This document shows positions 4,265-62,233 of a stretch of DNA of 64,000 bases, one piece after another. The stretch lies in NCBI GenBank assembly GCA_002269645.1, contig NIVC01000440.1, forward strand, positions 248,001 through 312,000, in the 5' to 3' direction. The translations under genes and the position numbers were made by a program. Numbering within the stretch: position 1 is the stretch's first letter; each line of letters starts with the position of its first letter. This DNA comes from Macrostomum lignano (Eukaryota). The notes under the pieces are model-generated. The model was not told the origin of the DNA, made no database searches, and worked only from the letters and a program-made list of their open reading frames with translations.

Positions 4265-4865
4265 CATCTGCTTGGCTTGGATTTTTAGAACTTCAAAAAG
4301 TGAACATTTTAACAATTATGAATTTACATAAATGCATGCTAGCTTTGATTTACTTAAGCGTGTTCCATTTGAAATACATTTATAAACAATTCCGTCCGTT
4401 AAACGGTGACCAATCATATATCAAGGACCACTAAAAGTAACCGTTGTATCAGGACGCAACACTCGTAGATATTGCAAAATTATTTGAAGGGCACACAGGT
4501 AGTTTTATCGCCAGGTTGCTTTAAATTTGGTTTTATTTAAGATGACAGCAAGTTTTACATGTACACCAATTTTGGAGATTCTGTGGATCAAAGAGGACGT
4601 CATCTAAAAGCACCTAAAAGCCGAAGTCCCAGTAGGCAGTAGGCAGCTCACAAGACGCCTCACGACAGATCAGGATGCCTCTGACGGGCCACGCCCTCAT
4701 GTCCTGTGGCGGCAGCTCAACTTCCTGAGTTTGCCGCGAGGTCCGAGTCGCGATCCTCGGGCTGCCGCGCCGCGCTGGCCTTCTAATTGTAATTCCTTAA
4801 TCTGATCGGACAATTGTACATGCAGTCAGAAAGCAGAGTCGGAATAAATAGTTCCTTAAATTCGA

Positions 4866-21894: not shown

Positions 21895-22806
21895 AAGCTA
21901 CCAGTATTTTTAGTTTAATAATTCAAGTAACAATTAATTAATTTAATTATAAGCAGAAGCTACAAAAAAACTTGGAATATATCTTGGCCTAGGCTAGGTT
22001 TCATTTGCTTTATTTAATAGATAAATATCTGCAATAAAAGCTTAAGAGAATGCTTTTTGTTTGGTTAGGGCCTAATCCAGTTTTATTATAGTAGTACCTA
22101 TCTAAGATTTGTAGATCTAGGCCAGATACTATACCCAATTTCAATATTTATCATTATCATTACTAATAAGATATAGGCCCCCTATAGAAATCAGTGTTGG
22201 GCACCATTAATGAAAATCTAAACTTCCATTAATGGCAAAATAGTTGACTATAGTCTTGACTGTTTAACTAGTTTTAATGAATTTTTTCTATTTCTCTAAA
22301 TTAGTACACTCAATGGTTTAATACCAGGTACAATGCAAAATTGGATCCAAGTTCCAAGTTCAAGATGCAATTTGGAAGTCAGGATGTTGCATAGCATCCC
22401 TATTGCTAACCTTAGCCTAGGTTTCTTTTTTCTGGCACTAGTAGGATGCTAAATTGCATTAAGGTCTAACTTGAAGACACAATTTTGAAAGTCAAAATGC
22501 TATAGCATCCCTCTTGCACAAAAAATAAACTTATGTATTTAAAAATTGTTTTGTTGTAAATTACAGCAAGTTTAGGCCCTAATATATTATATATTAAAAT
22601 TTGTTAATGTCATTAATCTTCCTATTCTTATCATTTATAGGATAATTAAAAATTCACAATTGTAAAATTCTCAACTACTATATTTTTTATAATTGTGGCC
22701 ACAAGAGCAGTTGCTATCTGTAAGCATATGCAGTGAAAATTTCTGCAGAATAATCATCCATACATGTTTGCAGAAAATTGCATATAACCAACCAATAAGC
22801 AAATTA

Positions 22807-25609: not shown

Positions 25610-25662
<53 letters not shown>

Positions 25663-25678
25663 CGATAGATAGATAGGC

Positions 25679-25741
<63 letters not shown>

Positions 25742-25774
25742 CAGATAGATAGATAGATCGATAGATAGATAGGC

Positions 25775-25821
<47 letters not shown>

Positions 25822-34604: not shown

Positions 34605-35178
34605 CCTTGAGTCGCAGCCACGGCTGGCCATGACAACTAAAATTAATATAATTAAACATCAAATTCGCTAATTTCAAGTTGCGATGGAAATTACACAACA
34701 ACGAAGTTGACTGTGCTGTTTGCAGTCTGTGATTATAAGAAAATTGAAATGTTGAGATTGAGAATGCCGTATTCAAGCAGAATTTTGCAACTTTTCGTTA
34801 CCTTTCAATTCGAAACAGAAGAACTAAATATACGAGCGCACAATCACAATTACACAAATAACAAATTTCAGAGGGACCCTAAGTCCCAAATTAGGCAAGC
34901 CGGCTCAAAAGCAAATGAATACATTACTAGGTGTCTCTTTTTTACTTTAAAACAAAAAATGCATTTCGCAGAAATTTTTTAGCATAAACTACGAGCGTAA
35001 ATCTGATAGATAAAGTTAGGTTTCAGATTTTTTGGCATTTAAACTTGCTGCGTCTCAATTTTTAGGCTTCAGAACAGAACTGCGAATGAGGCGGCATGTA
35101 GCTGTTTTGCTCAGGGTTGAATTCACAAAAAAGGAAAATGCTTAACTGAGGACTGGCAGTTAAATGAAATAAGGCCGG

Positions 35179-35825
35179 TAGGGTTGCCAACAATACCGTC
35201 CCCTATCAAGAGACAGGGGACGCCCACCAAGAGACAGGGGACGCCCACCAAGAGACAGGGGACGCCCACCAAGAGACAGGGGGCGCCCACCAAGAGACAG
35301 GGGACACCCGCCAAGAGACAGGGGACACCCGCCAAGAGACAGGGGACACCCGCCAAGAGACATGGATGTCCACCAAGAGACAGGGGGCGCCCACCAAGAG
35401 ACAGGGGACACCCGCCAAGAGACATGGATGTCCACCAAGAGACAGGGGACGCCCACCAAGAGACAGGGGACGCCCACCAAGAGACAGGGGACGCCCACCA
35501 AGAGACAGGGGCACCTATCAAGAGACAGGGACGACCACCAAGAGACAGGGGACACCCGCCAAGAGACATGGATGTCCACCAAGAGACAGGGGACGCCCAC
35601 CAAGAGACAGGGGGCGCCCACCAAGAGACAGGGGGCGCCCACCAAGAGACAGGGGACGCCCACCAAGAGACAGGGGCACCTATCAAGAGACAGGGACGAC
35701 CACCAAGAGACAGAGGACACCCGCCAAGAGACATGGATGTCCACCAAGAGACAGGGGCGCCCACAAAAAGACGGGCGCCCACCATGAGACTCGCATATTA
35801 GTGCCCCTAAGAGTTGCAAACCCTG
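35179..35825. repeat. 21-bp satellite (acgcccaccaagagacagggg) with higher-order variants, between imperfect hAT-like inverted ends
   Basis: Array at about 35205-35785. The ends tagggttgccaac and gttgcaaaccctg are imperfect complements; no 8-bp TSD. Confidence 0.85.
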
Positions 35826-36381
35826 AAATCAAAATTCCCAAGCACAACAGTTGGAGACAGGCACGATGTTTAGCTGATTTTAGAATACTTCGTAATACCA
35901 CAAATAGCCTTCTATCTCGCGCATGTTGTCACGCTGCAAGCTCGCATTTCTTCAACCCTCTATTCCTTCCATGTCCTTTCTCAGTTTTTTTCATACCCCT
36001 ATATGGTCACAGTGTCGAGGTTTGACTTTTTTCCCAACTGGATATGCAGGTGCACGAGACCATAGCGCCAACAGCTGTCAGGTAGGCAGTTATTCTGCCT
36101 TTCCGATCACGGGATTAGGCCGATCTGTGAGAGAGAGAGCATTTTCTGGGATATTGCGAGAAAACAAGGGGCTGAGTTTTAATGGCCTTGAGACTAAGAA
36201 TCGATAACTGATCAATCTTTAATTTTCCCTTGCGAAGATAAGGCAAGTTATACGTACACTAATGGGATTTTTGCGTTAAATAGGCGAAATAATCATTTAG
36301 GTTTCCCACTGTTTTAATTGATGCAAAAATTATTAAACTATTTAATCGTCTGGACAGCACAAAAATAAGAATACCACAGGT

Positions 36382-39300
36382 ATGAAACCACTGAGCATTG
36401 TGGTCACAATTCAGGTGTGCCTGACTGTTGCTTTTCTTGTTTTAAACGGTAAGTTCAATTTATAAACTGTTTTTAATGAGGTAGTGACTTAATAAACAGG
36501 TAAATATTGTATTAGCAGTGGACTTAAATACCCACAGCATGGGTAGGAGTGGACCTAAATATCCACAGCATGGGCAGGAGTGGACCTAAATTCCCACAGC
36601 ATGGGTAGGAGTGGACCTAAATTCCCACAGCATGGGTAGCAGTGGACCTAAATACCCACAGCATGGGTAGGAGTGGACCTAAATTCCCACAGCATGGGTA
36701 GCAGTGGACCTAAATATCCACAGCATGGGTAGCAGTGGACCTAAATACCCACAGCATGGGTAGCAGTGGACCTAAATACCCACAGCATGGGCAGCAGTGG
36801 ACCTAAATACCCACAGCATGGGCAGCAGCGGACCTAAGTTACCCTCAACTCAAACGGTTTGTCAAACAGGTGTCGCAACCGCCAACCCGGCCAACGCTTC
36901 CAAGCCCCGAACCCCGCCGCCACCACCGCCGCCGCCGCCGGTGGTTCTGCCCTCGGTGCCGGGCGGTCGACGCTGCGTGTTCCCGTTCTGGTGGCACGGC
37001 AGGTGGCATCACACCTGCGTGCGGTACGACCTCAAAGGCGAAGAGTGGTGCTCAATCACTGCAAACTTCACTAAAGACGAAAATTGGATGCGGTGCGACA
37101 GTGAGTTGGGAAGTCACGTGACTGCTACGATGACGTCAGCCTGTTAGATATGAGCACTGAGTGTTATGATTGAGTCAGTCTGTTAGACAGAAGTGGTGAG
37201 CATAATGATATAAAGATTTTATTGCCTATATTCGCAATATTTTCCATTTCAGCAATTAATTTTTGTTGCCTAAAGCAAAAACGACAATTTTTGAAATGAG
37301 CTCAGCCGCTCGCAATCTGTTTCCGGTTCAACATCTTTTATCCCTAACTCTAATTGCATCCTGACGGCTATTCGAGAGAAGTGTTCGGTGCACCTTCCAT
37401 CTAATTAACTGGCAGATTAGTCAGAAATAAGGAGCTTTGTTTGAGACAGAGCGTGCCATTTCCGCAACCTTTTAAGCTTGGAAATCTGCAGGAAGTTTGA
37501 ACTCAGACCATCTTTGAGGCTGCTCAATGAAACGTGGGCGTGGGAAATTTCGATAATTTGTTTGATGTTGGCTCCCTTGAAAAGGAAATGCGTTATGCAT
37601 CACGTTTGGAGCGCTCAAAGTAGCTGCTTGAACTGCAAAACTTTACCTGTTAAATATTAAATTTCAAATTTTACAGGACAGATGCTTACCTGTTGCAAGA
37701 CAAGCCCTGAATTTTTATCGAAAAGAGGGGTAACTAGCCTAGTGGTTAGAGCGTCAGACTTACGACTGGAAGGACAGGTCGACCCATTCGAGACAATTTG
37801 TGTCCTTGAGCAAGACACTTAACTCTGCATTGCTTCAGTTCACCCAGCTGTAAATGGGTGCCAGCATTAGCTGGGGTAATTGAGGGTGTGTGTGGCGACC
37901 CCCCAGTCCTTGGACTGAACAGCCGTACACAGCCTTCAGATGATTTTTCACCTATTTTTCCCAGGCCACGACAAGAGCCGCTTCCACTGTCGCATTACGT
38001 TCGCCTACGGCGGCCGCCTGCACTACAGCTGCCTGCAACTGTCTATGGCCGGACCTACTCCCGTTGCTCCGGCGACCAGCGGCTTCTGGTGCGGCCTGAA
38101 AGCCTCGATCGCCTCGGTCAGCTGGTCGAGCAGAGACTGGGCCTTCTGCGAGTCCACCAACGCCACCACCGCTGACTATTTGAAGGCTGTCGGCTGGCAC
38201 CGGGGCCTGACGGGCGCCAGGCTGGAGGCGCTGCTCAAGATCGCTAGGCATCGGAATGCCGTGCAGAGCGAGGCCGCCGAGGTCGCGAGTTCGAATCACG
38301 CAGCGGCGGGAGCGGCAAAGGCGGTCGCAGCCAGCGATTCATCCGGTGGCGTCGAAGGCGGCGAGGGCGAGGGTGCCGGAGACGATGGCGGCAGCTCCAG
38401 GTGGGGCGTCGGCCTGGTTGTGTCGCTTGGTGTCGCCTGCGGCTTGCTGACCTTGGCGGTGGCCATCACCGGCTGCGCTGTGCACAGGCGCTACTTCAGG
38501 TGAGCTGGACGGCTGGCTCATTTCAGGAGCTTCGGCGGTGCCAGGGACGCATCACAGCTCTCTTGGTGGGCGCCCCTGTCTCTCTCGGTGGGCGCCCCTG
38601 TCTCTCTCGGTGGGCGCCCCTGTCTCTTGGTGGGCACCCCTGTCTCTCTTGGTGGGCGCCCCTGTCTCTCTCGGTGGGCGCCCCTGTCTCTCTTGGTGGG
38701 CACCCCTGTCTCTCTTGGTAGGCGCCCCTTTCTCTCTTGGTGGGCGCCCCTGTCTCTCTTGGTGGGCGCCCCTGTCTCTCTTGGTGGGCGCCCCTGTCTC
38801 TCTTGGTGGGCGCCCCTGTCTCTCTTGGTGGGCGCCCCTGTCTCTCTTGGTGGGCGCCCCTGTCTCTCTTGGTGGGCGCCCCTGTCTCTCTTGGTGGGCG
38901 CCCCTGTCTCCTGGTGGGCGCCCCTGTCTTTTGGTGGGCGCCCCTGTCTCTCTTGGTGAGCGCCCCTGTCTCTCTTGGTGGGCGCCCCTGTCTCTCTTGG
39001 TGGGCGCCCCTGTCTCCTGGTGGGCGCCCCTGTCTTTTGGTGGGCGCCCCTGTCTCTCTTGGTAGGCGCCCCTGTCTCTCTTGGTGGGCGCCCCTGTCTC
39101 TCTTGGTGGGCGCCCCTGTCTCTTGGTGGGCGCCCCTGTCTCTTGGTGGGCGCCCCTGTCTCTTGGTGGGCGCCCCTGTCTCTTGGTGGGCGCCCCTGTC
39201 TCTTGATTGGCGCCCCTGTCTCTTGATTGGCGCCCCTGTCTCTTGATTGGCGCCCCTGTCTCTTGATAGGCGCCCCTGTCTCTTGATAGGCGCCCCTGTC

Positions 39301-40194
39301 TCTTGATAGGCGCCCCTGTCTCTTGATAGGCGCCCCTGTCTCTTGATAGGCGCCCCTGTCTCTTGATTGGCGCCCCTGTCTCTTGATAGGCGCCCCTGTC
39401 TCTTGATAGGCGCCCCTGTCTCTTGATAGGCGCCCCTGTCTCTTGATTGGCGCCCCCGTCTCTTGATAGGCGCCCCTGTCTCTTGATTGGCGCCCCTGTC
39501 TCTTGATTGGCGCCCCTGTCTCTTGATAGGCGCCCCTGTCTCTTGGTGGGCGCCCCTGTCTCTTGGTGGGCGCCCCTGTCTCTTGGTGGGCGCCCCTGTC
39601 TCTTGGTGGGCGCCCCTGTCTCTTGGTGGGCGCCCCTGTCTCTTGGTGGGCGCCCCTGTCTCTTGGTGGGCGCCCCTGTCTCTTGGTGGGCGCCCCTGTC
39701 TCTTGGTGGGCGCCCCTGTCTCTTGGTGGGCGCCCCTGTCTCTTGGTGGGCGCCCCTGTCTCTTGGTGGGCGCCCCTGTCTCTTGGTGGGCGCCCCTGTC
39801 TCTTGGTGGGCGCCCCTGTCTATTGGTGGGCGCCCCTGTCTCTTGGTGGGCGCCCCTGTCTCTTGGTGGGCGCCCCTGTCTCTTGGTGGGCGCCCGTCTT
39901 TGGTTGGCGCCCCTGTCTTTTAGGCCAGTGGTGAGGGTGGCAAAGGTTGAGCTCACTGTCTTTTGTCGAGCCTGGCTGCCTCTTTCATTTAGTTTTTGGA
40001 GAAGCGCAGGTTTTGTGAGGCCGAATGAGGGGGGGGGGTCCCTGTACATGTACATGTATAACAGCGCCCAGTTTGTAACACAAATTTCAGAGGCCGGTAC
40101 AAGCGCGTCGACCCGCTTCTCACCTCTGACTCGATGGAGAGAAGCGGCTACGGAGGCGTCGATGCCTACCACGACTGACAATTACCGTTTCTAA
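36382..40194 (+). CDS. Type I membrane protein with two fibronectin type II-like modules, 4 exons (36382-36448, 36870-37100, 37965-38499, 39924-40194)
   Basis: Signal MKPLSIVVTIQVCLTVAFLVLNG, a proline-rich stalk, CVFPFWWHGRWHHTC...EWCSITANFTKDENWMRC (FN2 consensus), a second CRITFAYGGRLHYSC...FWCG module, and TM WGVGLVVSLGVACGLLTLAVAITGCAV followed by HRR. Intron phases 1, 1 and 2 are compatible. The last exon is the least certain. Confidence 0.72.
36515..36835. repeat. 31-bp minisatellite (gcagtggacctaaatacccacagcatgggta), FN2 gene intron 1
   Basis: Direct inspection. Confidence 0.9.
37726..37944 (+). mobile_element. tRNA-derived SINE (family 1) with a conserved-core-like central domain
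   Basis: A-box tagcctagtggttag and core gtgtccttgagcaagacacttaac...gcttcagttcacccagctgtaaatgggt. A second copy lies at about 51935-52085. Confidence 0.75.
38555..39920. repeat. 20/22-bp satellite (ggtgggcgcccctgtctctt), FN2 gene intron 3
   Basis: Same family as the 35.2-35.8 kb array, in opposite orientation. Confidence 0.95.
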
Positions 40195-41877: not shown

Positions 41878-44045
41878 ATGTCCACTGCCGAGCAGCTGAG
41901 CGAGGAAGAACTGGCTCTGTACAAAGCCGCCTTCGGCATCTTCGATCGGGACAGTGACGGGTCCATCACGGCGGCGGAGCTGGGCTCGGTGATGCGGTCA
42001 CTGGGGCGGCATCCTTCAGATGCCGAGATTAAGGTTAGTATACCTGCATGTCATATTTAATTAGTAGGTAAAAAACATTTCTTACAGGGAGCGTTTTACA
42101 AGCCCGAATCTTCACAGGGTTGAATCTTTACAAGCTCGAATCTTCACAAGATCGAATCTTCACAAGCTTGAATCTTCACAAGCTCGAATCTTCACAAGCT
42201 CAAATCTTCACAAACTCAAATCTTCACAAGCTCGAATCTTCACAAGCTCGAATCTTCACAAGCTCAAATCTTCACAAGCTCGAATCTTCACAAGCTCAAA
42301 TCTTCACAAGCTCGAATCTTCACAAGCTCAAATCTTCACAAGCTCAAATCTTCACAAGCTTGAATCTTCACAAGCTCGAATCTTCACAAGCTTGAAACTT
42401 AACGACACATTTCCGAAAAGTCTTGCTGGCCACTTTCGCTAGTTCACAACTTAAGATGAATTCAATATTATAAAATTTCGAACTTGTGAAGTTTTGAGAT
42501 TATAAAAAGCGAATCAAGGGCAACTTTATCACTCAGGATGGGAGTCTCGCAATTTATGGTGAAAAAATCACGAGGTTCGTTTAAATGCAGTGCAGTGTTC
42601 TATGGCCAAGCCGTACTGCAGATCCCACAGACACAAAATCACCGACGACAAGGCAAGGACTACACTAGTCAAAAAACACACAATTTTAGTACGAGCCAGC
42701 TACCCTGTTACTGCCGATTTTTAAATAATCTTTCAGTCCTGGGATCTCGCACATCATGTAACATGACCAAGACTTTCAAATTTCTCGTGTGCAAACCGAC
42801 CAAAAATTGAAAGCAAAAAATCGCTGCTGGGGAGAAAGTTTCCTATGGCTAAAAGATTTTAGATTGATTTAGTGCGAAGCCAGCGTCTGTGTTAAATCCT
42901 CACTTAGTGCAATGCTAGCAACAATATTCATTGACTGCTCAAGTACAGTCTGAAGCACTGTACATTGAATCGTATAGTACGATGGGTGTCCAGAGAAAGT
43001 TCTGACACTTTTAATCTCAGAGCAAAATGAATTCAGTCGCGGGTATTTTGATCATTTCACTCAAAAGAATAAAAAAATAAAAAGTGATATTGAATATTTT
43101 GTCCTCAAAAAAACGAATCATATTCATAAAGTCATATTCATCATCATCATCAACCCTCAAGGCAGCCTTCTCAACCTGTAGCAACACACACTTTTCCCAT
43201 TGCTTGAGCATTCTGTAACTTCGGCCTTCTTTCGATTGTAGACTCACGATGATGTCAATAATCATAAAAATAAAAAAAACTTGACTAATTAAGTAAACTT
43301 TCGCAAGGTGCAAACACAGTGAGATTTGCTTACGGAGTGTATAAAATACTCAACAGAGAAGGGGTGGACGGTAAGAGAGGGATGCACTGTACATCAGAGC
43401 CGTTTTGTGTACACTCGTACTTGCGTACTGCAAAGAAGATCCATAAAAAACTGACTAAGTTATGTTCTTCACCTTTTACTGTAAGACTATCAGTGACATT
43501 GCGATGGCTTTTCACACACATCACTTTTGAATGAAATGATCAAAATACACGCGACTGAATTCATTGGAAAGAAGAGACGTGCCGCTTAAAAATGACACTA
43601 ATCTGGGATTAAGCTAGTCAGAACTTTCCGGAAACACCTCGTACATTGTAGAATACCTCCTTTGGTCCTACTGTTTAATAATAAAGAGTCCCTGAAAACG
43701 CAGGAGATGATCAACGAGGTGGACGAGGACGACAACGGCAGCGTGGACCTGTCCGAGTTCCTCACCCTGATGCTGCGCAAAACCAGCGACGCGGATGCTG
43801 AAGAAGAGATCCGCGAGACTTTCCGCGTGTTCGACAGAGACGAGGACGGCTATTTGTCCGTCAAGGAGCTGCGTCACGTGATGTCCTGCCTGGGCGAGGA
43901 GGTCAGCGAAGTCGAGGCCGTGAAGATGCTGCTCACAGCCAAGGCGAAGAATGGCGGCGAGTCCGGCAGCGTCTCGAACTCCGAGGAGCTGCTGGTGAGC
44001 TTCGATGAGTTCCGAGCGTTGGCCACTGGCCAGAACTGGCCGTGA
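41878..44045 (+). CDS. Calmodulin-like protein, 2 exons (41878-42033 and 43704-44045), 165 aa; EF-hand 4 degenerate
   Basis: EF loops [24 protein letters not shown] and [12 protein letters not shown]; calmodulin-like [12 protein letters not shown] and [12 protein letters not shown]; phase-0 GT-AG intron. Confidence 0.9.
42100..42395. repeat. 16-bp minisatellite (ctcgaatcttcacaag), calmodulin-like gene intron
   Basis: Direct inspection. Confidence 0.92.
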
Positions 44046-45442: not shown

Positions 45443-47722
45443 TCAGGTGCAGTGAGCCTCGCGCTCCACGCTTAGCAACTGCATGGCAACTCGACCTGGC
45501 TGGTTGATGGAACTCCACCCCATCGATCCGGCGACAATCGAGCAGTTGCGGCCTGAGCAGAAGGAGCCGCCGCCGCCTCCGGCATCCGTGTAGCGGAGAC
45601 TCGCGCCGCCTCCGCTGTAGCCGCCGCCGCCTCCGCCAGCTCCGTACCGGTAGTAGCCAGTATAGTTCAAGGCTCCGCCACCGCCGCCGCCTCCGAAGCC
45701 GCCGTGGCCGACGCTGCCGTCGCCCGCCGTGCCGCCGATCCAGCCGTCGATGCGACTGCCGCCACCATCGCCGTCTTCGCCGCCTCGCCGTGGGTTGATC
45801 GGCTTGCCAAGCCAGCCGGCTCCGCAACCGCCGTGGTTGGTTATTGAGTTAACTCGGTACTCAGTTGAGCTGGCCATGAGACTGGGATCGTTCAGGCCGG
45901 GGCTCCCATTGGCCCCGCCGAATCCGTACTGAGGATTATAATCGCTTACCGGATAATAATTGCTGGCGTCTGTGCCGTTTTGTCCTTCCTGACCGCCGAG
46001 GCCTTTGCAGATGAAATCGAATAGGAAGATTTTTATGGGATTTGAGGTCGCAACGAACTGAACAGTTGAATACAGTTGCAGTGTGTAAATCCAAGGACTG
46101 CTCAAGCAGAAGAACAGGAAACCGCGTTTCTTGGAAAATTTTAGGAGACATGTCTTAACCGAAAAAATACATTATTGAGATTAGAGGCTTTCATTTTTCA
46201 GCAAAAAACTAGCAATCAGCGCCCCCCCCCCCGGGAATTCTGACTTCTCAGTCTTGACATCTCAGCAATTCCCCCTTAACACAGAATCCTAATTTTATCA
46301 ATGAAAAGCTTTATGGATATCAATAGAGTAATAAGAAAGGCCACACATGCTTTAGTCCTTGTTTAAATCATTCATGCACACTTTGAATCTTTCAATGGTT
46401 TCCTGACCGGGATTCGGAAATCAAAAGTACACAAGACCACTAGGCCCAAATCTCACCATATCTCCAATAGGTGGATCCGCCGCCTCCTCCAGCTGCCAGA
46501 AGGAGCTCGCAGCTCTCCGATGAGTTCAGCTGGCACACGAAGCTGCCTCCGCCGCCGCCGCCTCCGCGATAGTAAGGGACTTCGCCGCCAGCCTGACCGA
46601 CCACAATCTCCAGCCGGGTGCCGGCAGTTAGGAAGAAGTTCCCGATTGCAGTGGCACCGTTGCCTCCTCTTCTATTGGAGCTTTGGCCGCCGGACGCGCC
46701 TCGGGCCTCAAGCTTGTAGCAGCCGCTAGCCACCACAACTTTGCGCTGGATCGAACCGAAGCGACCGGAACTGGAATCTAAAATGTTTTAAATTAGTTGA
46801 TTTGTCTTTGAAAATCTGCACTCGTCAAAATCTTGCCTTCTGACTTAGTCTATTTAATCTCCTGGCCAGATGGGCATAGATTGTACATGCCTGACGATTA
46901 GAAAGTCAGAGCCGCTGTGCAATCTGCGTAAGAGTGATTAAGTCTATAGAAATCTCTCTTGCACGTATAGTGCAAAAATCTTAGTTCAGGAGGACTATAC
47001 GTGCAGGTTTCAATGGGATTGAAAGTTCATATTTATTAAAACGCTATTATTGTAGTCCTCCATTAGTCCTTGGTTGGGCAAATGGAAAATCCTAAGGCAA
47101 TGGTACGCTCGTAGTGATGACGGAGCACGCTACACTGCGCAAGTCGCACTTCTAAAGGAATCGAGGCCCACAAGTCTTCAAGTACACTCTTATTACGCAT
47201 GTGTACTTTTCTTGATCATGGATTTTCACTTAACAGAGCCAAAAAAGACCTCCCGAAAAACAACGCTCTAAACAGTTAACAAGCCGCAGAGAACTCACTG
47301 ACGAACTCCGGGTTGACATTCCGCTCAGCTTCGCTGAGCAGCTTGGCGAAGTTGTCGATCCTCCAAACCACCGCGCCCGCCTCTGTGGCCAGCAGCCGGC
47401 GCTGGTGGCTGCCCTCCGGCCCCGGTCCGACTGACTCATTGTGGACGACGACCAGCTGGCAGAGGCGACTGGCGTTCACCAACACTGCGGCAGCGCAGCG
47501 CCTCGTCCGGCACCTCAGAACGCACTGGAGCTCGTTGTCGACTTCCGTCTCGTTGATGATCTCGCTGCTCACCGCAATGTCCAGCTCGACCGGGCCGCCC
47601 CCTCGGTGAAAGTCGGCGCAGCTACCGTCGTCGACACCTACGACGGAACTCGCGCCTGCGGACAACTCACCACAGATGGCTACGAGTTGCATCAGGAAGA
47701 TCCTATCGATATTGATGAGCAT
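45443..47722 (-). CDS. Secreted PAN/Apple + ALK/LTK-type glycine-rich-domain protein B, 3 exons (47722-47299, 46777-46457, 46002-45443), 434 aa
   Basis: 1305 nt in frame with phase-1 GTGAG donors. PAN-like ELQCVLRCRTRRCAAAVLVNASRLCQL; GRD motifs GSIQRKVVVASGCYKLEARGASGG, IVVGQAG, LAAGGGGG, NHGGCGAGW, GGFGGGGGG and GGGGGSFC. Paralog of gene A. Confidence 0.82.
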
Positions 47723-50036: not shown

Positions 50037-51289
<1,253 letters not shown>

Positions 51290-52085: not shown

Positions 52086-52633
52086 TACCTGCATGTTCAT
52101 CAGTATCTACATATAACAGATCCAGCTGAAAATTGAAGCCATTTCCAAGCGCCATGACATCTATGCCTCTATTGCAGCGCGTCCTAGCAGGTGCAATCAC
52201 TATTCGCAAAGCAGGCCTGCTGAGACGAACTAAGAAGAATATATTATAGAAAGGGACCTTTTGTCTGCTTTTAATCATGAATAAGAGCAGGTAATGGGGA
52301 GTTGCTCCGCCGGCGCAATTATAAGCTCAAGCATGCACACCTGACGGTCTTCTTCTTTCGCGAGCGGGTTTCTCTTCCCTTCGAAGCCTACCTCTGCATA
52401 ATAGAGATTCCTCTAAGCCTGGCTAATTCCCGAGCTCGGCCTAATCACCTCCCTTCAAGCAGTCTAATTGCATACATAGGGCCAGGTGTAGGAAAGAGAT
52501 GGACAGGTGGGCAGGAGGTTTGATCGAGTATGTAAGAAAGCTCCCGGCCAAGAGAGCCGCGCTCCCTCCTTATCGCTCACTCCTAAAGCCCAGCTTCAAT
52601 TCCCGCTCTTCATCGAAAATCGCGAGCTACGAT

Positions 52634-53501
52634 ATGAAATTTCGGCATCGACATCAGCTGCCCACTGAGCCGCTGAGCCTGCTCATTCGCAAAATTAATG
52701 ACACTCACTTCGTTGCCAAAGTCGACACGGACTCTTCTGTTGGTTCCGGCAGCACTTCGACGGGAAGCGACAACAGCGGCGCCGTCTTCTATGTCGTTGC
52801 CGTGGTTTTCATTTGGGGCTTCTCCATCATATTACTGATCGCGTCCTACATCCGCAAGAGTCGCATGGACAATAACATCTCGCTGTATCTGAAAGAGATT
52901 CAAACTGTGCAACGTCGAACTCGCAAGGAGAAGATTCTGCGCTTCATCAGCCTGCTGCAATCGCACGGCAACAACAGCGCTAGCGGTGGCAATGTCACAC
53001 CGAAGCTCGCCAGCGGCAGCTCAGGTCGACGGGCGAGCTCCCAGTCATGCAACGTGAGCTACGCCTATTGCCGAAGTAGGTCGCCATCCCCGACTATAGG
53101 CTTAGCTGCGGCTGCAGGCGCAAGTGGCAGTCTGCAGCTCCTATCAACGTCGCATCGTCAGCAGACTAAGAAGAAGCCGACAGAAGTTCTTCGCGGTCAC
53201 CTGCAGCCTCCCGCTCCGCCAATGACACCTAAAATTGATTAATTCAGAAACTGCTACCGCTAATTATGAATTAGCTGCTGCAACCGGAGCAAAAGTAGAG
53301 CGACACAACTATGGCTGCTTTCTCCCGGAGATTTGCATTGAAAGTGACGTCGATTTGACGGGCGCTGAGTCATCGATATCAGATGTGGATGAAATTGCCC
53401 AGCAGATCAACACTAGTCCAGAGCAGGAAGACATTTACCTGCCTGATACTACCTTTTCAGTCAACAAAAGTGATCGAAATCGAAATGTTACTGACATGTG
53501 A
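52634..53501 (+). CDS. Single-pass membrane protein with a KCNE/MinK-like TM segment; apparent 1-nt frameshift at 53231-53234
   Basis: No signal peptide, an N-D-T sequon, and TM YVVAVVFIWGFSIILLIASYIR. Removing one A from aaaa joins the ORF ending at 53242 to the ORF 53235-53501. An upstream in-frame start at 52499 is also possible. Confidence 0.55.
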
Positions 53502-54347
53502 AGTTTAAGACAAAAATTCCTTGTTTGGTTATGGTGAAATACGCTCGAATTCATGTTTGTATACGTACATGTACACCTGCATGTACATGTCATATTTACG
53601 TACACTTAAACAATCGTTAATTCTACGCAAATTACCTCCATGAAGTTCGGTTAATTTAAAATATAAAATAATCTTTATGGAAAACATAAACATGCAGCGA
53701 TTGGAAACAATGTGGTATGCTCTTGGAGTTTTTGCAATTGAATGTATACATGTCGTAATAGTAAATTGGGCTGCAATTTATTGTGAATAAAATGTTAACA
53801 GAATGTGGCAAATAAGTGCTGATGTTAAGGGGCCATTGGATTGTGCAGAGTTGTTCATTAAAGTACTTGCCCGTCGCAAATTTCTGCTAACTTCCGCTAG
53901 ATAGCAGCTAGAAGTGCAAAAAACGGAATGCATCTTAAAACGCTAGACATATATTTTTATAATTTAAAATCCGAAAAGTGAATAAAAACAATATTTAAAA
54001 GGGTTTTCACAGTACTTTTAAATTATTTATTTGTTTTTTTAGTGATCTTCGTTGACTTGGCGTCCCATTTTTTTAACTGCAACTTTTATGAATAATATTA
54101 ACTAAGTCTAGCTGAATCTCTTGCCGCCACTTGCTAATCTCTGTTTGGCTTGTACAGTAAAAATAGTTTTAAGAGAAATGATGAAGCTACTGTTTGAAAC
54201 AAGAATAATATTTTCAACATGGATTTTTGCGTTCATATTTTTACAATGCCACGTTAAAGGTATGTTTTTCACTACACCATGCTTGCATTGCCATTGGCTT
54301 GGCCTAGGCGAACCGAACAACGCTGCAACGCACCTGCTGTTGCCAGT

Positions 54348-57300
54348 ATGCTGTTATACCTCCTTATACTAGCCTACTTCTGGAGTTTTGTTTTGCCTAG
54401 GTCTTATTTAACTTACTGTCGTCTATATACCACTAAGGCTATGTCTTTACATTCATTTTTTCTGCTTTGTAACTCGTGTTATAGTCCTATTCTTTTAAAT
54501 CTACCAGCACTTGTCTTTGTCTTGACCACACGTTGCATCGCAAATAATTAATAAGTTCATATCATATATCGACTTTAGTTGCGACTTGATTTGATTGATA
54601 TGGTATAGGCCCTATAGCCATACACATTTTAACAGTTTTCTAGAAGACTGATTTTACTATGCCTAGGCCCTACTTAAATGCTAAATAAATAGGAGTGAGT
54701 AGTGAGCACAATATAGGGGCCTACTTTGCTAACTAAAAGTCAGATAATTTGCTATTGACATTGAAATGAAATATTGTATCTAAAAATAATAAAAGTATAG
54801 AACCATTTAATTCTAAATACTCATTTAAGATAGAAGCCATATTTAAAAAATCTAATTCTAGTCTAACTTGAATTTTTAATTTTTCAAAAAATGTTTAGGC
54901 CCCTATAGTTTAGCATAGCCATAGTGTAATAGTTTATATTATTATAATTAGGGGCCTATTTGAATTACATTAAACAAAAATTAAAAATCAGTTTATTTTT
55001 GGTCTCTTGGTTTTTTAATGCAAGTACCAGTACTAACTGATTAAATTAGATTTTTATTAAAAGCTTAAGATGTTAAGTAGGCCTATTATAGAAACAAAAA
55101 TAATTAGTGGCCTAGGTGTAACTTCTTATAATAATAGAATTAAATTAATTAGGCCCTACTGATGTATTATATAATTATACTACAATCTAGCTTTCTATGT
55201 TTTACCTTCAAAACTGAAATAAATTTATTAACTAGCATTAAATTCTTTTATTACCAATTCAGTGTACAATATGCAAATTTACATTAGGACAATATAGGTC
55301 TTTTAAATAAAAAGGGAAACAATAGTATAAAACAATTTAAATTGTTCTTACCATTTGTTTTAAATGTAAATTCTAAATAAATTGTAAATATATTGGAAAA
55401 TATTTGTCCCCTGGCTTAAGCTTAAGTATGTTAAATAGAATTCGAAAAAAAAGAAATAGAAAAGTTATTGTCAATTAATAATTAAAGGGTACAATTGACA
55501 TTTTTTGTCATAATCTAAATATACTAAATCTCTAAGGTTTGTATGTCCATAACGCTCTAGAGATCGCAATTCTTCACCGATTTTGATCGCGTTTTCGCCA
55601 AAAGATTTGTAATCAGCCTGGGATTGTATGGTTAAGATAATATACTAATTTTAATGATTAGCATAGTTGTCATAACTATGCTATAAGGGTATCCACACTT
55701 TTCAGTGCCTGGCATTTTGGTGCCCTAGTTTGCTTCTCAGTGCCAGATTTTAAAATAGAATTGGACATAAACAGATAGATCTAAATATACTAAATCTCTA
55801 ATATTTGTATGCTTGTCCATAACGCTCTAGAGAGAGCAATTCTTCACCGATTTTGATTGCATTTTCGCCAAAAGATTTGTAATCAGCCTGGGATTGTATG
55901 GTTAAGATAATATACTAATTTTAATGATTAGCATAGTTGTCATAACTATGCTATAAGGGTATCCACACTTTTCAGTGCCCGGCATTTTGGTGCCCTAGTT
56001 TGCTTCTCAGTGCCAGATTTTAAAATAGAATTGGACATAAACAGATAGATAGTAAGCTCTGATTTAGCAATAGGTGCTTTGCAATACTTCTTTACTTAAA
56101 AAGTAAAGTTATATTTTCATTATTTATTTTGTTAAGCTGATTAGCTGTTTTAATATTTTTTAAAATTCTCTTGTTTCATATAAATTTAGAATCTTTCAAA
56201 TACCATATTTAATACAAATTTGTTATTATCCTTCTACTGTTGAACTTTTATTAAATACATTGACGTATACCAGCCAAACAGGCTTGCTGCCTGAGCAAAA
56301 CTTACTACTACTACTAAATTTTTTGTCTCAACTGAGTTAAGACTTGACTTGACTTCTCAAGAAAAAAACACAATTGTGTAACACAGGAAATCAATACTAA
56401 AATTTATTTGTCACATTTCATAATTTCAATAAAAACTATACATGTAAACATAGTTAGATGGATTTCATCTTTACCTAAAACTAAGTCTTCTTTATCTTAG
56501 CACATGTGCTAAGTGCAGCCTTGTATATACACTAGATACAGCAAATGCTTGCAATTAAATCAAACAGATTTTTCGAAATTTAAGAAACATGTCAGTTTAA
56601 CAAAATGGATACTGCTTTTGTTAGGAATCATTAACAAATATTTATTATATTTGTTATTAGATTAATTTTTCTATTATTTAAGCGTCATACACTGAGGCAC
56701 CAAAATGCCAGACGCTGAATAGCATGGGCACCAAAAAGCATGGAAACTGCTATAAGTATTAGTATAACTATGCCAAAAAGACAATTGGGAACAATTATAA
56801 GTCTCCCAATTGGCATTAATGTTCCATAGTAGGCAATATGTTTAACCTTTTAATTATAAATAAGTTATTAGGTTAATCATATATATACCAACAAACAATT
56901 TTTTAGTATATGCATTGTCTATTAAACAACTTATTAAGTGAGTCAAAAAACAACCATTTTAACATTTAACAATTTTAACAATTATTTAAGCTTGCTCAAT
57001 TTGCTCCATTGAAGCAAATGGAAGTCTTTTTGGGCAGTGTCTTGCCTAGACATAAAAAATCAATTGGCATGTCAACACATTTTAACATGTTTAGAATCCT
57101 TAACTTGAGAAATCATCAAATTCAAATTGCATAAAAGTAGGTTTTTTCATTCAAGGAGTACAAACAAGGTATACTAAGAGTGAAAAATGAAATAAAGTTA
57201 GATTATACTATGAAAATGTATTAAAGATAATAAGTTTAATCCAACAAACACTTGATAGTTCTTAGTTTAAGTCAGCCATAGCTACCATACTTAGCAAATA

Positions 57301-58342
57301 TTCAATCCAAAGTTTTGCTGACTACTGATTAGATGACGAAGTATTTGCTTATACTAAAGAAGTTAAAGTTACTCATGCCGTTTACCCATGGCTGTCATTC
57401 ACTCCACCCAGGCAGCTTATTCGACTTTGTCACCTGCGGCTCGGTGCTAAAACTACAAAATCTGGCGCACAATGTTCGCTTGCACTCGCACGAGGTTCGC
57501 TACGGCTCGGGCTCTGGCCAGCAGTCTGTCACTGGCGTGGAGGCCACCGAGGACGCCAACTCGTATTGGCGAGTGCGCGACGCCACCAGCGGCACCGGCT
57601 GTCGCCGTGGCGACCCCGTCCGATGCGGCGACACTCTGCGACTGACTCACCTGGCCACGGGAAAAAACCTGCACAGTCATCTGTATAGCTCGCCTATCAC
57701 GCAGGAACAAGAGGTTTGTAGACTTAAAATCCAGATCCCAAATCCCAATGTTAGTTTTAGATCTTAAATCCCAATGTTAGTTTTAGATCCCAAATCCCAA
57801 TGTTAGTTTTAGATCCCAAATCCCAATGTTAGTTTTAGATCCCAAATCCCAATGTTAGGTTTAGATCCCAAATCCCAATGCTAGTTTTAGATCCGAAATC
57901 CCAATTCTCGCGGATCCCAATGCAAAAACAAATTTTTATGCGTCTTTTGCTGCAGGTTTCCGCCTACGGCGACGCCAAAGGCGAAGGCGACCGCGGCGAC
58001 GATTGGACCGTCGTCTGCGACACCTCCGGCGGCGGCGGCGGCGGCGGCCTGTGGCTTCGGTCTCAGCGGGTGCGCCTGCGGCACAGCGTCACCGAGCGCT
58101 ACCTGCACGTTGCCGGCGCGCGTTTCGGTCGACCCATCGCCGGCCAGGCGGAGGTCAGCGCCGTGGCGAGCGGCGGCGGCCGCGGCAGCTACTGGCTGGC
58201 CGCGGAGGGCGTCTTCGTGAAGCCGAACGAGGCGTCGGAGTCGCCTGGGATGGGCCGCGCGCCAAGCGTTGAACGGCCGGCGTTTGTCGTGTCGGGCGAC
58301 GGAGCCGACGGCGGCGGCCTGCACGACTCTGGGGAGCTGTGA
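54348..58342 (+). CDS. SDF2: Stromal cell-derived factor 2(-like 1), three MIR domains; exons 54348-54400 (tentative signal exon), 57416-57713 and 57956-58342
   Basis: VTCGSVLKLQN...VRLHSHEVRYGSGSGQQSVTGV, CRRGDPVRCG..LRLTHLATGKNLHSHLYSSP, EVSAYG...EGDRGDDW and WLAAEGVFVKP. The signal exon joins in frame only through the second AG of CAGGCAG, so exon 1 is less certain than the MIR exons. Confidence 0.88.
55515..56050. repeat. Tandem duplication of about 266 bp (two near-identical copies) in SDF2 intron 1
   Basis: ctaaatatactaaatctcta...ggacataaacagatagat occurs at about 55515-55780 and again at 55781-56050. Confidence 0.9.
57722..57920. repeat. About 27-bp minisatellite (tagatcccaaatcccaatgttagtttt), SDF2 intron 2
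   Basis: Direct inspection. Confidence 0.88.
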
Positions 58343-61108: not shown

Positions 61109-62233
61109 ATGGGTAATAAATCGTCGAAACGGGCCGCTTTGAAACCTGCCACCAGCGTTCCCAATGTCTGTCGCGGCACCGCGGACAGCGGCACTAATAG
61201 CAAAGGCGTGACGCTGCGACGCTCGAAACCGCCAGCCCGACCGGTCACTTGCGTCGCGGATCGTCCGGCATCGGTTCAGCCCAGGTCCACTCGGCACTCG
61301 GATACCAGACTTATCATTAATCAGCTGTGCTCAAAGCGGCCAAAGTACTGCCTACTCAAACAGTTGGACTTTGATCAGCTAGACGAGCAGGTGCAGTTTC
61401 TCCTGTTCGAGTCCGTGTGCGACCAGCTCGATCAGCTGGGCACCATCGATCGGCTGCGATCGGCGCAGGCTGCACAAAGACCTGCCATGGTCAAGACAAA
61501 GACAAGCGGCAATAGTTTAGAGCAGATTGTGACAGATTATCGCCAGCTGTGCAGCAAATTTATGGCTGTCGCAATGCCCGAACTGCTGTTGCTAACCGGT
61601 TGCCAGCCGGAAGAATTGTACAGCTCCGCGCACAGAATCCTTGCCGAGATGTTGAGTGAAACTGAGACGCTGTGGCATTCGAAGGCGGACTCATTAACCT
61701 GTAGCCTTCTCGACTGCAGCTCGCCTTCGTCGAGCAGCTCCACGAATCGATCGATGGTCAGACAGCAGGTGCAGCAACTGCTCTGCTCAACTTCAGCCGA
61801 GGTTGCCGCAACCATCGGTTGGAGTTCTTTGCTGTCAGCCAACTCGTTGGCTTTGCTGCTGTCTTCCGAAAGCGATAGGGATCAAAATCCCCAGTCGCTG
61901 GGCTTGGCTACCCAGCGGTTCCTCGACGCTGCAGCCGTTTGGTGCTGGGGCGCAGTTTGCGCCTGTCATTCGAGCTTCAGCGGCCAAGCGTCATCCAGTC
62001 TGACTGTACTTGTCGAAGACCTTGTCGAAGGCAGTGGCACTACTCTGAAATTCGATCCCAGACTGCACCGGACTGTGGTTGGTGCGGAACGAGCCGGGGC
62101 TCGCATCGGGTGCGTCCTATGGCCGGCCCTGTGTCACAGAGTTGATCCCAAACAGCAGGATTCGAACCCATGCGATGCGACCAAGCTTAAACCGGAGACA
62201 ATCTTGTGCAAAGCGATGGTTAAGCTGTGTTGA
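61109..62233 (+). CDS. Intronless 374-aa protein with an N-myristoylation motif and a MIEAP/SPATA18-like C-terminal domain
   Basis: The start MGNKSS fits M-G-x-x-x-S. The C-terminus ...VWCWGAV...LKFDPRLHRTVVG...IGCVLWPAL...ILCKAMV resembles the MIEAP C-terminal pattern FD..H.R...I...WP.L...L.KG.V as recalled. Confidence 0.55.
   Translation: MGNKSSKRAALKPATSVPNVCRGTADSGTNSKGVTLRRSKPPARPVTCVADRPASVQPRSTRHSDTRLIINQLCSKRPKYCLLKQLDFDQLDEQVQFLLFESVCDQLDQLGTIDRLRSAQAAQRPAMVKTKTSGNSLEQIVTDYRQLCSKFMAVAMPELLLLTGCQPEELYSSAHRILAEMLSETETLWHSKADSLTCSLLDCSSPSSSSSTNRSMVRQQVQQLLCSTSAEVAATIGWSSLLSANSLALLLSSESDRDQNPQSLGLATQRFLDAAAVWCWGAVCACHSSFSGQASSSLTVLVEDLVEGSGTTLKFDPRLHRTVVGAERAGARIGCVLWPALCHRVDPKQQDSNPCDATKLKPETILCKAMVKLC

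What the first reader, a model, noticed from the sequence alone, without database searches (positions are those of the whole stretch)
52634..52900. KCNE/MinK-like potassium-channel accessory subunit candidate in an invertebrate
Seen: a single TM without signal peptide, an upstream N-glycosylation sequon, and YVVAVVFIWGFSIILLIASYIR (52790-52855). Recalled knowledge: human KCNE1 has [22 protein letters not shown], which aligns without gaps at 9 of 22 positions (YV..V....GF.......SYIR), followed in both by a basic patch and a later Tyr. Sequence-recognisable KCNEs are mainly known from chordates, while nematode MPS proteins are only loosely similar. Inference: a deep homolog or a convergent Kv/KCNQ modulator.
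Basis: partly seen in the sequence, partly recalled or inferred. Interest (0 to 1): 0.7.

Follow-up and report, generated by a model that had tools for sequence, protein, structure and literature searches.

The report
KCNE-like orphan single-pass membrane protein
A real flatworm gene, not called in the gene table I could see, encodes a small one-helix membrane protein of an uncharacterised family; it resembles vertebrate KCNE potassium-channel subunits no more strongly than it resembles an unrelated mitochondrial protein, so KCNE ancestry is not shown.

Summary
ORF 52634-53242(+) encodes one transmembrane helix, no signal peptide and an upstream NDT sequon. The 22-mer at 52790-52855 matches human KCNE1 at 9 of 22 positions.

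The window is Macrostomum lignano contig NIVC01000440.1, and no gene is called at this ORF. The protein has 212 relatives (best E=5.7e-17). All 12 named ones are spiralians and are labelled uncharacterised; none of the 21 relatives listed with precomputed Pfam domains has one.

KCNE membership is not demonstrated:
- Pfam ISK_Channel is the only hit, but it scores 13.6 bits against a cut-off of 22.1.
- Family consensus sequences do not hit ISK_Channel at all.
- The Tyr of "SYIR" is not a family feature.
- hhalign against KCNE gives Prob 78-86% (P=6e-6 to 2e-5) and beats 200 of 200 shuffles.
- Against PDB, KCNE2 ranks first (E=0.048) but ties with mitochondrial NDUFB11 (E=0.054).
- NDUFB11 outscores every single KCNE sequence, and the decoy SMAGP equals KCNE3 and KCNE4.

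Best reading: an orphan N-out single-pass membrane protein whose very conserved helix docks into an unknown membrane partner. I put true KCNE homology at about 15%.

The gene probably continues into a second exon or frame ending at 53501.

The parts
52634..53242 (+). Open reading frame (202 aa plus stop). It holds the whole conserved part of the protein and is probably coding exon 1.
   Evidence: ORF list and translation. phmmer found 212 relatives at E<=1e-3, best 5.7e-17. The start Met aligns with Met1 of P0001. No gene is called here in the contig's gene table.
52676..52726 (+). Predicted extracellular beta-hairpin (aa 15-31) carrying the N-D-T sequon (52697-52705) at its turn.
   Evidence: The AlphaFold2 model has strands at 15-22 and 25-31. 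An N-x-S/T sequon lies upstream of the helix in 143 of 145 relatives, at a median of 27 residues before it.
52772..52849 (+). Transmembrane helix (aa 47-72).
   Evidence: Hydropathy peak of 2.81. Model pLDDT is 94-95. D46, G49, Y53 and I65 are invariant, and every position from 49 to 71 carries at least 2.2 bits of information on all helix faces.
52850..52969 (+). Cytoplasmic continuation of the helix (aa 73-112): basic patch RKSR, then near-invariant Asp79 and Tyr85, then a conserved charged stretch (family consensus V92-R93 ... E96-R97-R98).
   Evidence: The model shows one continuous helix from 47 to 112, with pLDDT 80-97 up to about residue 110. Relatives average 4.8 Lys/Arg in the 15 residues after the helix and 1.3 before it.
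52970..53239 (+). Ser/Ala-rich tail predicted to be disordered (aa 113-202). It is not conserved, and part of it may be intron.
   Evidence: pLDDT is about 46-67 and no secondary structure is predicted. Relatives do not align here.
53248..53501 (+). Probable second coding exon, or the continuation after a frameshift, in another reading frame. It carries the motif LPEICIESD (53322-53348).
   Evidence: The motif [LIV]P.I[CF][IV][ED].[DSE] occurs about 33 residues from the C-terminus of three close relatives (P0001, P0005, P0009). It occurs exactly once in the six-frame translation of the whole window, here, against 0.0065 expected by chance. In-frame GT..AG introns exist, for example 53076-53247 or 53196-53247. 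This is inferred: I had no transcript data, and the motif was defined after I had seen the site.
52499..52633 (+). In-frame upstream extension (45 codons from an earlier ATG), probably 5' UTR rather than coding sequence.
   Evidence: The ORF list shows a 247-aa version. P0001 aligns only from the Met at 52634.

Best explanation
Shown:
- 52634-53242(+) is a genuine protein-coding gene of the flatworm Macrostomum lignano, and no gene is called at this position.
- It belongs to an uncharacterised family whose named members are all spiralians (molluscs, annelids, a nemertean, a brachiopod).

Inferred from sequence:
- The protein is a small N-out, C-in single-pass membrane protein without a signal peptide.
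- It has a short ectodomain hairpin that is probably glycosylated.
- One long helix forms the membrane span and continues into the cytoplasm.
- A disordered tail follows, probably ending in a second exon.

Inferred mechanism:
- The membrane helix is almost unchanged across phyla and is conserved on every face. It is therefore probably buried inside a membrane-protein complex rather than serving as a lipid anchor.
- The protein most likely acts as a small auxiliary subunit that docks into a multi-pass partner (a channel, transporter or receptor).
- The juxtamembrane helix (Asp79, Tyr85, basic residues) would contact the partner's cytoplasmic face, and the tail would carry trafficking or scaffolding signals.

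Its resemblance to vertebrate KCNE subunits is real at the level of architecture. It is too weak to count as membership, and is either convergent or too remote to demonstrate.
For: - Gene and organism: an exact gene look-up places the window on GCA_002269645.1 contig NIVC01000440.1, which papers name as M. lignano Mlig_3_7.
- Family: 212 relatives at E<=1e-3 and 33 at E<=1e-10, with the match centred on aa 18-115.
- Named relatives: Pecten, Octopus (two species), Elysia, Physella, Potamilus, Batillaria, Capitella, Ridgeia, Tubulanus and Lingula, all labelled 'uncharacterized' or 'hypothetical'. None of the 21 relatives listed with precomputed Pfam domains has one, and no member's Pfam match approaches a cut-off.
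- Conservation: the core alignment has invariant D46, G49, Y53 and I65, and near-invariant A50, V54, V57, S64, I69, S71, D79 and Y85. Information content is at least 2.2 bits at all 23 helix positions, with a low helical moment of 0.12.
- Topology: a sequon upstream of the helix in 143 of 145 relatives; Lys/Arg 4.8 after the helix against 1.3 before; 134 of 138 lack a signal-peptide-like N-terminus.
- Model: hairpin 15-31, continuous helix 47-112, disordered tail.
- KCNE resemblance is above shuffles but below thresholds.
Against: - No partner has been identified and there is no expression or functional evidence.
- All-round helix conservation would also fit a homo-oligomer.
- The family consistently ranks KCNE at or near the top. 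Pfam gave ISK_Channel as the only hit for the window protein and the most frequent hit among members, 20 of 106. KCNE2 ranked first against PDB. hhalign gave Prob 85.6%. Real members have a median of 11.3 bits against a KCNE model, compared with -0.9 for 7,550 decoys. Dismissing homology may therefore be too cautious.
- Most relatives come from unnamed assemblies, so the spiralian-only distribution rests on 12 names.
Confidence: 0.55

Rival explanations
1. The family is the true, highly diverged invertebrate counterpart of KCNE, sharing common ancestry with it. It assembles with KCNQ or other Kv channels in the cleft between voltage sensor and pore, as KCNE3 does with KCNQ1.
For: - ISK_Channel is the only Pfam hit of the window protein and the most frequent weak hit among members, 20 of 106.
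- hhalign gives Prob 77.6% with P=1.9e-5 and Prob 85.6% with P=5.6e-6.
- None of 200 block-preserving column shuffles reaches the real score (mean 16.1, max 33.5, real 37.8).
- Separate KCNE1, KCNE3, KCNE4 and KCNE5 profiles all align in the same register, Tyr on Tyr and Arg/Lys on Arg/Lys.
- The family profile ranks KCNE2 first of 177,635 PDB sequences, with KCNE3 and KCNE1 also listed.
- Topology and an upstream sequon are shared.
- Canonical KCNE has not been found in invertebrates (PMC13516689), so the taxonomic distributions do not overlap.
Against: - All scores fall below curated or conventional thresholds (13.6 against 22.1 bits; best member E=0.0021; PDB E=0.048).
- NDUFB11 ties with KCNE2 in PDB (E=0.054) and beats every single KCNE sequence in hhalign (30.7 against 27.3 or less). 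An arbitrary decoy, SMAGP, reaches 24.4.
- Five family and subfamily consensus sequences give no ISK_Channel hit at E<=10, only scattered unrelated families.
- Weak hits of equal strength go to LMBR1 (17 members), CytochromB561_N and TssO.
- The KCNE hallmarks Ser68 and 'DP[FY]..YI' are missing, and the Tyr spacing differs by 3 residues.
- The ectodomain is predicted as a hairpin, whereas I recall KCNE ectodomains as helical.
- No bridging members were seen in ecdysozoans or non-vertebrate deuterostomes among the named hits.
Confidence: 0.15
2. The protein works without a heterologous partner. It could be a homo-oligomeric small membrane protein (a pore or a regulator), or a sorting or adhesion adaptor whose conserved helix mediates self-association.
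For: - Helix conservation on all faces (moment 0.12) is what a tight homo-oligomeric bundle would show.
- There are small and polar residues in the helix (G49, A50, G62, S64, S71).
- A long cytoplasmic helix rich in Arg, Lys and Glu could form a coiled coil.
Against: There is no direct evidence. No repeat or pore-lining polar stripe is evident. The conserved ectodomain hairpin and the invariant Asp46 at the membrane edge suggest recognition of something else. This reading remains untested.
Confidence: 0.2
3. The ORF is a chance reading frame or a decaying pseudogene copy in a repeat-rich neopolyploid genome.
For: - No gene is called here and the exact protein is not on record.
- The conserved C-terminal motif lies in another frame after the stop, which could reflect a frameshift.
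- The surrounding sequence is full of tandem repeats.
Against: - The closest relative matches at E=5.7e-17, and all family-invariant residues are retained.
- The conserved 110 residues are intact.
- In-frame GT..AG introns can join the two frames.
Confidence: 0.05

Closest known systems
KCNE / MinK-related peptides (Pfam PF02060 ISK_Channel), vertebrate auxiliary subunits of KCNQ1 and other Kv channels
   Same: - Small N-out single-pass protein without a signal peptide, with an N-x-S/T sequon in a short ectodomain.
- An acidic residue about 7 positions before a conserved Tyr at the outer end of the helix.
- A Gly in mid-helix, a small residue plus Arg/Lys at the inner end, a basic patch, then Asp/Glu and a Tyr.
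- KCNE is the best-ranked known family in Pfam and PDB searches, and hhalign gives Prob up to 86%.
   Different: - Scores fall below the Pfam cut-off.
- Family consensus sequences do not hit the model.
- There is no 'RS[KR][KR]' Ser and no 'DP[FY]..YI', and the Tyr spacing is 3 residues shorter.
- The helix is far more conserved than it is among KCNE paralogues.
- The ectodomain is predicted as a beta-hairpin.
- The tails are much longer.
- It is found in spiralians, where canonical KCNE has not been reported (PMC13516689).
NDUFB11 / ESSS subunit of mitochondrial complex I (Pfam PF10183)
   Same: A 'YD', a short spacer, then 'V.FFFGFSIVLVLGS' closely resembles the family's 'YDD.GALYYVVAV.FIYGFSI.LMIGS'. 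The PDB E-value is 0.054, equal to that of KCNE2. The hhalign score is 30.7, higher than for any single KCNE sequence. Eight members give weak ESSS hits.
   Different: NDUFB11 is a mitochondrial inner-membrane protein with a presequence (from my own knowledge). The family has a near-universal sequon upstream of the helix and N-termini that do not look like mitochondrial presequences by eye, which points to the secretory pathway. I treat it as a look-alike that calibrates how far chance or convergence can go.
C. elegans MPS-1 to MPS-4 (MiRP/KCNE-like proteins)
   Same: Invertebrate single-pass proteins described as loosely KCNE-like (PMC13516689).
   Different: They are described as nematode-specific. 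I did not compare their sequences here, and no nematode appeared among the named relatives.
FXYD proteins (single-pass regulators of the Na,K-ATPase)
   Same: The same general kind: a small single-pass regulator with an acidic/aromatic motif before the helix and conserved Gly and Ser within it.
   Different: There was no Pfam hit to the FXYD family. hhalign scores were 11.6 for FXYD2 and 15.3 for phospholemman, at background level, and the motif spacing differs.

Membership tests
KCNE (Pfam PF02060 ISK_Channel) | Scores at or above the curated Pfam gathering threshold (22.1 bits) | tested here: not met
   The window protein scores 13.6 bits, E=0.057. The best of 106 relatives has E=0.0021, which I estimate at about 18 bits by scaling from the window's score. 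Five consensus sequences give no hit at all. One of five shuffled controls gave an unrelated hit at E=0.042.
KCNE (Pfam PF02060 ISK_Channel) | Profile-profile similarity at a reliable level (HH probability above about 95%) and specific to KCNE | tested here: inconclusive
   hhalign gives Prob 77.6% and 85.6%. None of 200 shuffles reaches the real score. However, NDUFB11 outscores all single KCNE sequences, and SMAGP equals KCNE3 and KCNE4.
KCNE (Pfam PF02060 ISK_Channel) | N-out single-pass topology, no signal peptide, short N-terminus with N-glycosylation sequons | tested here: met
   This feature is shared with many unrelated proteins, so it has little discriminating power.
KCNE (Pfam PF02060 ISK_Channel) | Juxtamembrane signature after the helix: [RK]-S-[KR]-[KR], then D-P-[FY]-x-x-Y-I (KCNE1-3) | tested here: not met
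   The family has [RK]-K-[NS]-x-x-D-x-x-[LIV]-x-x-Y-[LM]-K-[ED]. It has no Ser at the position of the KCNE-invariant Ser68, no Pro, and needs a 3-residue gap to align the Tyr.
   At position 72, the 50 aligned members have His in 16, Leu in 10 and Tyr in 9. Position 74 is Arg in 25 and Lys in 22. Ser71 is near-invariant.
KCNE (Pfam PF02060 ISK_Channel) | Assembles with and modulates KCNQ1 or other Kv channels | not testable with these tools
   No complex prediction or electrophysiology was available.
KCNE (Pfam PF02060 ISK_Channel) | Phylogenetic continuity with vertebrate KCNE through intermediate taxa | tested here: inconclusive
   All 12 named relatives are spiralians. Most relatives are unnamed, so absence elsewhere is not proven.
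Uncharacterised spiralian single-pass family (no Pfam model) | Significant sequence similarity over hairpin, helix and juxtamembrane helix, with the invariant residues kept | tested here: met
   E=5.7e-17 to P0001, and 33 relatives at E<=1e-10. D46, G49, Y53 and I65 are present.
NDUFB11 / ESSS (Pfam PF10183) | Passes the Pfam threshold; mitochondrial presequence | tested here: not met
   Only 8 of 106 members give weak hits, the best at E=0.014. The window protein has no ESSS hit. A near-universal sequon points to the secretory pathway, and the N-termini do not look like mitochondrial presequences by eye (no predictor was run).

The most novel reading that the evidence does not exclude
This spiralian family is the long-missing invertebrate counterpart of KCNE. 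That would make single-pass Kv/KCNQ auxiliary subunits ancestral to bilaterians rather than a vertebrate invention, with the flatworm, mollusc and annelid proteins tuning KCNQ-type currents.
Probability: 0.13. Interest if true: 0.85.

Novelty: new variant of a known kind. Interest (0 to 1): 0.45.

Why it matters
Current literature states that canonical KCNE genes have not been found in invertebrates and that the family's origin is unclear (PMC13516689). A demonstrable invertebrate relative would move the origin of Kv auxiliary subunits back by hundreds of millions of years. It would also offer tractable models (Macrostomum, molluscs).

Setting KCNE aside, the family is worth attention in its own right. 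It spans several phyla and has no Pfam model. It has one of the most conserved single membrane helices one is likely to see, which usually marks an obligatory partner inside the membrane.

The analysis is also a cautionary example. Helix-centred similarity that beats every shuffle can still be matched by an unrelated natural protein (NDUFB11).

Tried and rejected
- Word-indexed protein search with the single protein found nothing.
- phmmer of the protein against PDB gave no KCNE hit, only chance hits.
- A profile of the full-length alignment A1 against PDB gave no KCNE hit. The trimmed core alignment A3 changed this, so the first result reflected a poor profile.
- Exact-protein look-ups for the 202-aa and 247-aa products found nothing on record.
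- Rfam on the whole window gave nothing.
- Foldseek of the AlphaFold model against PDB gave no match below E=7, as expected for one long helix.
- The FXYD, phospholamban, DAP12, CD3-zeta and syndecan decoys, along with most of the others, scored at background.
- Reading the family as NDUFB11-related: rejected on topology and the sequon.
- No second copy of the gene exists in the window.
- The tail similarity to P0001 and P0005 by tblastn alone was too weak to use (about 18 bits). A motif search supports it.

Full report
**1. What is in the sequence**

The + strand carries an ORF from 52499 to 53242. From the Met at 52634 it encodes 202 residues.
- The peptide YVVAVVFIWGFSIILLIASYIR is at 52790-52855, as reported.
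- It lies within the only hydrophobic segment of the protein (19-mer hydropathy peak 2.81).
- The N-terminus is hydrophilic, so there is no signal peptide.
- An N-D-T sequon is at 52697.
- RKSR and Tyr85 follow the helix.
- The ungapped identity to the KCNE1 segment is 9/22. Shuffling the 22-mer 2,000,000 times gives P=4e-5 for this single comparison. That is not compelling once one allows for the thousands of membrane helices a reader can recall.

**2. Where the window comes from**

A neighbouring ORF (61109-62233) is an exact match to a gene on NCBI assembly GCA_002269645.1, contig NIVC01000440.1. Several papers identify that assembly as Macrostomum lignano Mlig_3_7, a free-living flatworm. 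In the gene table for this contig, genes are called on both sides but none between about 51290 and 54112. The ORF is therefore not called as a gene there, and neither the 202-aa nor the 247-aa product is on record.

**3. It is a real gene of a real family**

An exhaustive phmmer search of 1.84 billion representatives found 212 relatives at E<=1e-3 and 33 at E<=1e-10. The best was 5.7e-17, and the match always centred on residues 18-115.

Every relative that carries a name is a spiralian:
- Molluscs: Pecten maximus, two Octopus species, Elysia, Physella, Potamilus, Batillaria.
- Annelids: Capitella, Ridgeia.
- Nemertean: Tubulanus.
- Brachiopod: Lingula.

All are labelled uncharacterised or hypothetical. 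None of the 21 relatives listed with precomputed Pfam domains has one, and no member's Pfam match comes near a curated cut-off. There are two large subfamilies and several small ones.

A trimmed alignment of 50 members (A3) shows D46, G49, Y53 and I65 invariant. A50, V54, V57, S64, I69, S71, D79 and Y85 are at least 90% conserved. All 23 helix positions from 49 to 71 carry at least 2.2 bits, with no preferred helical face (moment 0.12).

Other family-wide features:
- A sequon lies upstream of the helix in 143 of 145 members.
- Lys/Arg averages 4.8 in the 15 residues after the helix and 1.3 before it.
- 134 of 138 members lack a signal-peptide-like start.

AlphaFold2 with a 22-sequence alignment predicts a hairpin at 15-31, one continuous helix at 47-112 (pLDDT 80-97) and a disordered tail. 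tblastn of the closest relative starts at the Met at 52634, which supports that start codon.

**4. Gene model**

Three close relatives (P0001, P0005, P0009) carry the motif [LIV]P.I[CF][IV][ED].[DSE] about 33 residues before their C-termini. In the six-frame translation of the entire window this motif occurs once, as LPEICIESD at 53322(+). That is 80 bases past the ORF's stop, on the same strand, in another frame, against 0.0065 expected by chance. In-frame GT..AG introns can join the frames. Donor GAA|GTAGGT at 53076, or donor GCG|GTCACC at 53196, can pair with acceptor TTAATTCAG| at 53247, giving products of 231 or 271 aa.

I infer a second coding exon ending at 53501, or else a frameshift. 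The motif was defined after I had seen the site, and I had no transcript data.

**5. Is it a KCNE?**

In favour:
- ISK_Channel is the only Pfam hit of the window protein (E=0.057). It is also the most frequent weak hit among 106 members, at 20 members with best E=0.0021.
- hhalign of the family against KCNE sequences retrieved from the database gives Prob 77.6%, P=1.9e-5, score 37.8. With a more balanced KCNE1-5 alignment it gives Prob 85.6%, P=5.6e-6, score 38.7.
- None of 200 shuffles that permute KCNE alignment columns within the N-terminal, helix and C-terminal blocks reaches the real score (mean 16.1, sd 4.1, max 33.5).
- Separate KCNE1, KCNE3, KCNE4 and KCNE5 profiles align in the same register.
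- A locally built KCNE model scores real family members at a median of 11.3 bits (window 22.4). The 7,550 block-shuffled decoys have a median of -0.9 and a maximum of 17.1.
- The clean family profile against 177,635 PDB sequences ranks KCNE2 first (E=0.048, 16.5 bits), with KCNE3 (E=0.73) and KCNE1 (E=1.7) also in the list of 23.

Against:
- Nothing passes a curated or conventional threshold. Pfam gives 13.6 bits against a cut-off of 22.1.
- The same Pfam scan gives equally strong hits to plainly unrelated families: LMBR1 in 17 members (best E=0.001), CytochromB561_N at 0.00029, and TssO at 0.00061. E-values for these proteins are therefore optimistic.
- In the PDB search, NDUFB11, the ESSS subunit of mitochondrial complex I, ties with KCNE2 (E=0.054).
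- In hhalign against single sequences, NDUFB11 scores 30.7, above KCNE1 (27.3), KCNE4 (25.6), KCNE3 (24.9), KCNE2 (21.1) and KCNE5 (17.1). An arbitrary decoy, SMAGP, reaches 24.4.
- Because the family carries a near-universal sequon upstream of its helix, it is very unlikely to be a mitochondrial NDUFB11 relative. At least one of the two equally good matches must therefore be convergent. Natural single-pass proteins share an order of features that shuffling destroys: an acidic flank, an interfacial Tyr, small residues, then a basic patch. Shuffles are thus too lenient a null.
- Consensus sequences of the whole family, of both main subfamilies, of the 'KRK..ED' subgroup and of the window's closest group give no ISK_Channel hit at E<=10. 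They give only scattered unrelated hits. One of five shuffled controls produced an unrelated hit at E=0.042.
- The Tyr of the eye-catching 'SYIR' is not a family feature: position 72 is His in 16, Leu in 10 and Tyr in 9 of 50 members.
- The KCNE-invariant Ser68 and the 'DP[FY]..YI' motif have no counterpart, and aligning the Tyr needs a 3-residue gap.

My verdict is that this is similarity in the range where homology cannot be told from chance. KCNE is the best-ranked known family, but membership is not shown. I put common ancestry at about 15%.

**6. How it most likely works**

Shown: a conserved gene and a family spanning several phyla.

Inferred from sequence: N-out single-pass topology, probable glycosylation, and a helix that continues into the cytoplasm.

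Inferred mechanism: a membrane helix that is nearly invariant on all faces, from flatworms to cephalopods, is not a passive anchor. It is most simply explained as being buried within a membrane-protein assembly. I therefore propose a small auxiliary subunit of an unidentified multi-pass partner.
- The juxtamembrane Asp79 and Tyr85 helix would contact the partner's cytoplasmic side.
- The variable tail would carry trafficking or scaffolding signals. Many members end in an acidic 'hydrophobic-x-x-E-[DE]' motif, or in ...S-[ST]-V or ...T-S-L, which resemble PDZ ligands. I judged this by eye.

A Kv/KCNQ partner is one possibility among several. A homo-oligomer is the main alternative.

**7. Comparison and novelty**

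A 2026 eLife paper states that canonical KCNE genes have not been identified in invertebrates and that the nematode MPS proteins are only loosely KCNE-like (PMC13516689). The family described here is not a canonical KCNE by the tests above. It is best filed as a previously undescribed family of KCNE-like architecture, a new variant of the single-pass auxiliary-subunit kind. Its sequences already sit in databases as 'uncharacterized protein'.

**8. Caveats**
- The KCNE alignment I could retrieve is mammal-dominated.
- Most relatives are unnamed, so the spiralian-only distribution is provisional.
- No expression, interaction or electrophysiology data were available.

Noticed in passing
window 53248-53501 (+), motif at 53322-53348: A family-specific C-terminal motif (LPEICIESD) lies in a different frame just past the ORF's stop. 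This implies a second exon or a frameshift, and several in-frame GT..AG introns are possible.
   Followed up: partly
window 10046-10624 (-) and 45443-46105 (-): Two ORFs contain very glycine-rich stretches (GGGGGYSGGGA...GGGGGSF). They remind me of the glycine-rich region of ALK/LTK-type receptor ectodomains. Neither had a Pfam hit at E<=1e-3.
   Followed up: partly
window 22693-23244 (+) and 25234-25608 (+): An acyl-CoA-binding domain (ACBP, E=6e-30) is followed about 2 kb downstream by an enoyl-CoA hydratase/isomerase domain (E=9e-17). Together they look like exons of an ECI2-like gene.
   Followed up: partly
window 43662-44045 (+): A calmodulin-like protein fragment with EF-hands (EF-hand_1 E=2e-16).
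   Followed up: partly
window 184-804 (+): A remnant resembling the RNase H part of a retrotransposon polyprotein. The Pfam RNase_H hit is weak (E=1.6e-4, below the cut-off).
   Followed up: partly
window 38523-40194 (both strands), 35123-36025, 4783-5638, 10825-11397, 25517-25909, 50243-50726: Long tandem repeats create spurious ORFs in several frames. Examples are the 66% GC block at 38-40 kb, which encodes repeated '...APTKRQGRPPRDRGAHQETG...', and a (GTCT)n-type array at about 50.2-50.7 kb.
   Followed up: no
window 54112-58342 (+), 61109-62233 (+), 63285 onward (+): Called genes downstream of the ORF: a MIR-domain protein of 278 aa; a 374-aa protein with no Pfam domain that starts MGNKSSK (a possible myristoylation signal); and an acyltransferase with PF01553 and PF16076.
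   Followed up: no
window 28256-30546 (-): Two long ORFs on the minus strand (460 aa and 273 aa, the latter with a membrane helix) have no Pfam match. They may be exons of one uncharacterised gene.
   Followed up: no
relatives P0001-P0150 (not in the window): Many family members end in ...QVVS[ST]V...TSL or ...[IV][IV]NE[DEN]..L. These are possible PDZ-binding or acidic sorting motifs. The window protein's predicted ends do not show them.
   Followed up: partly
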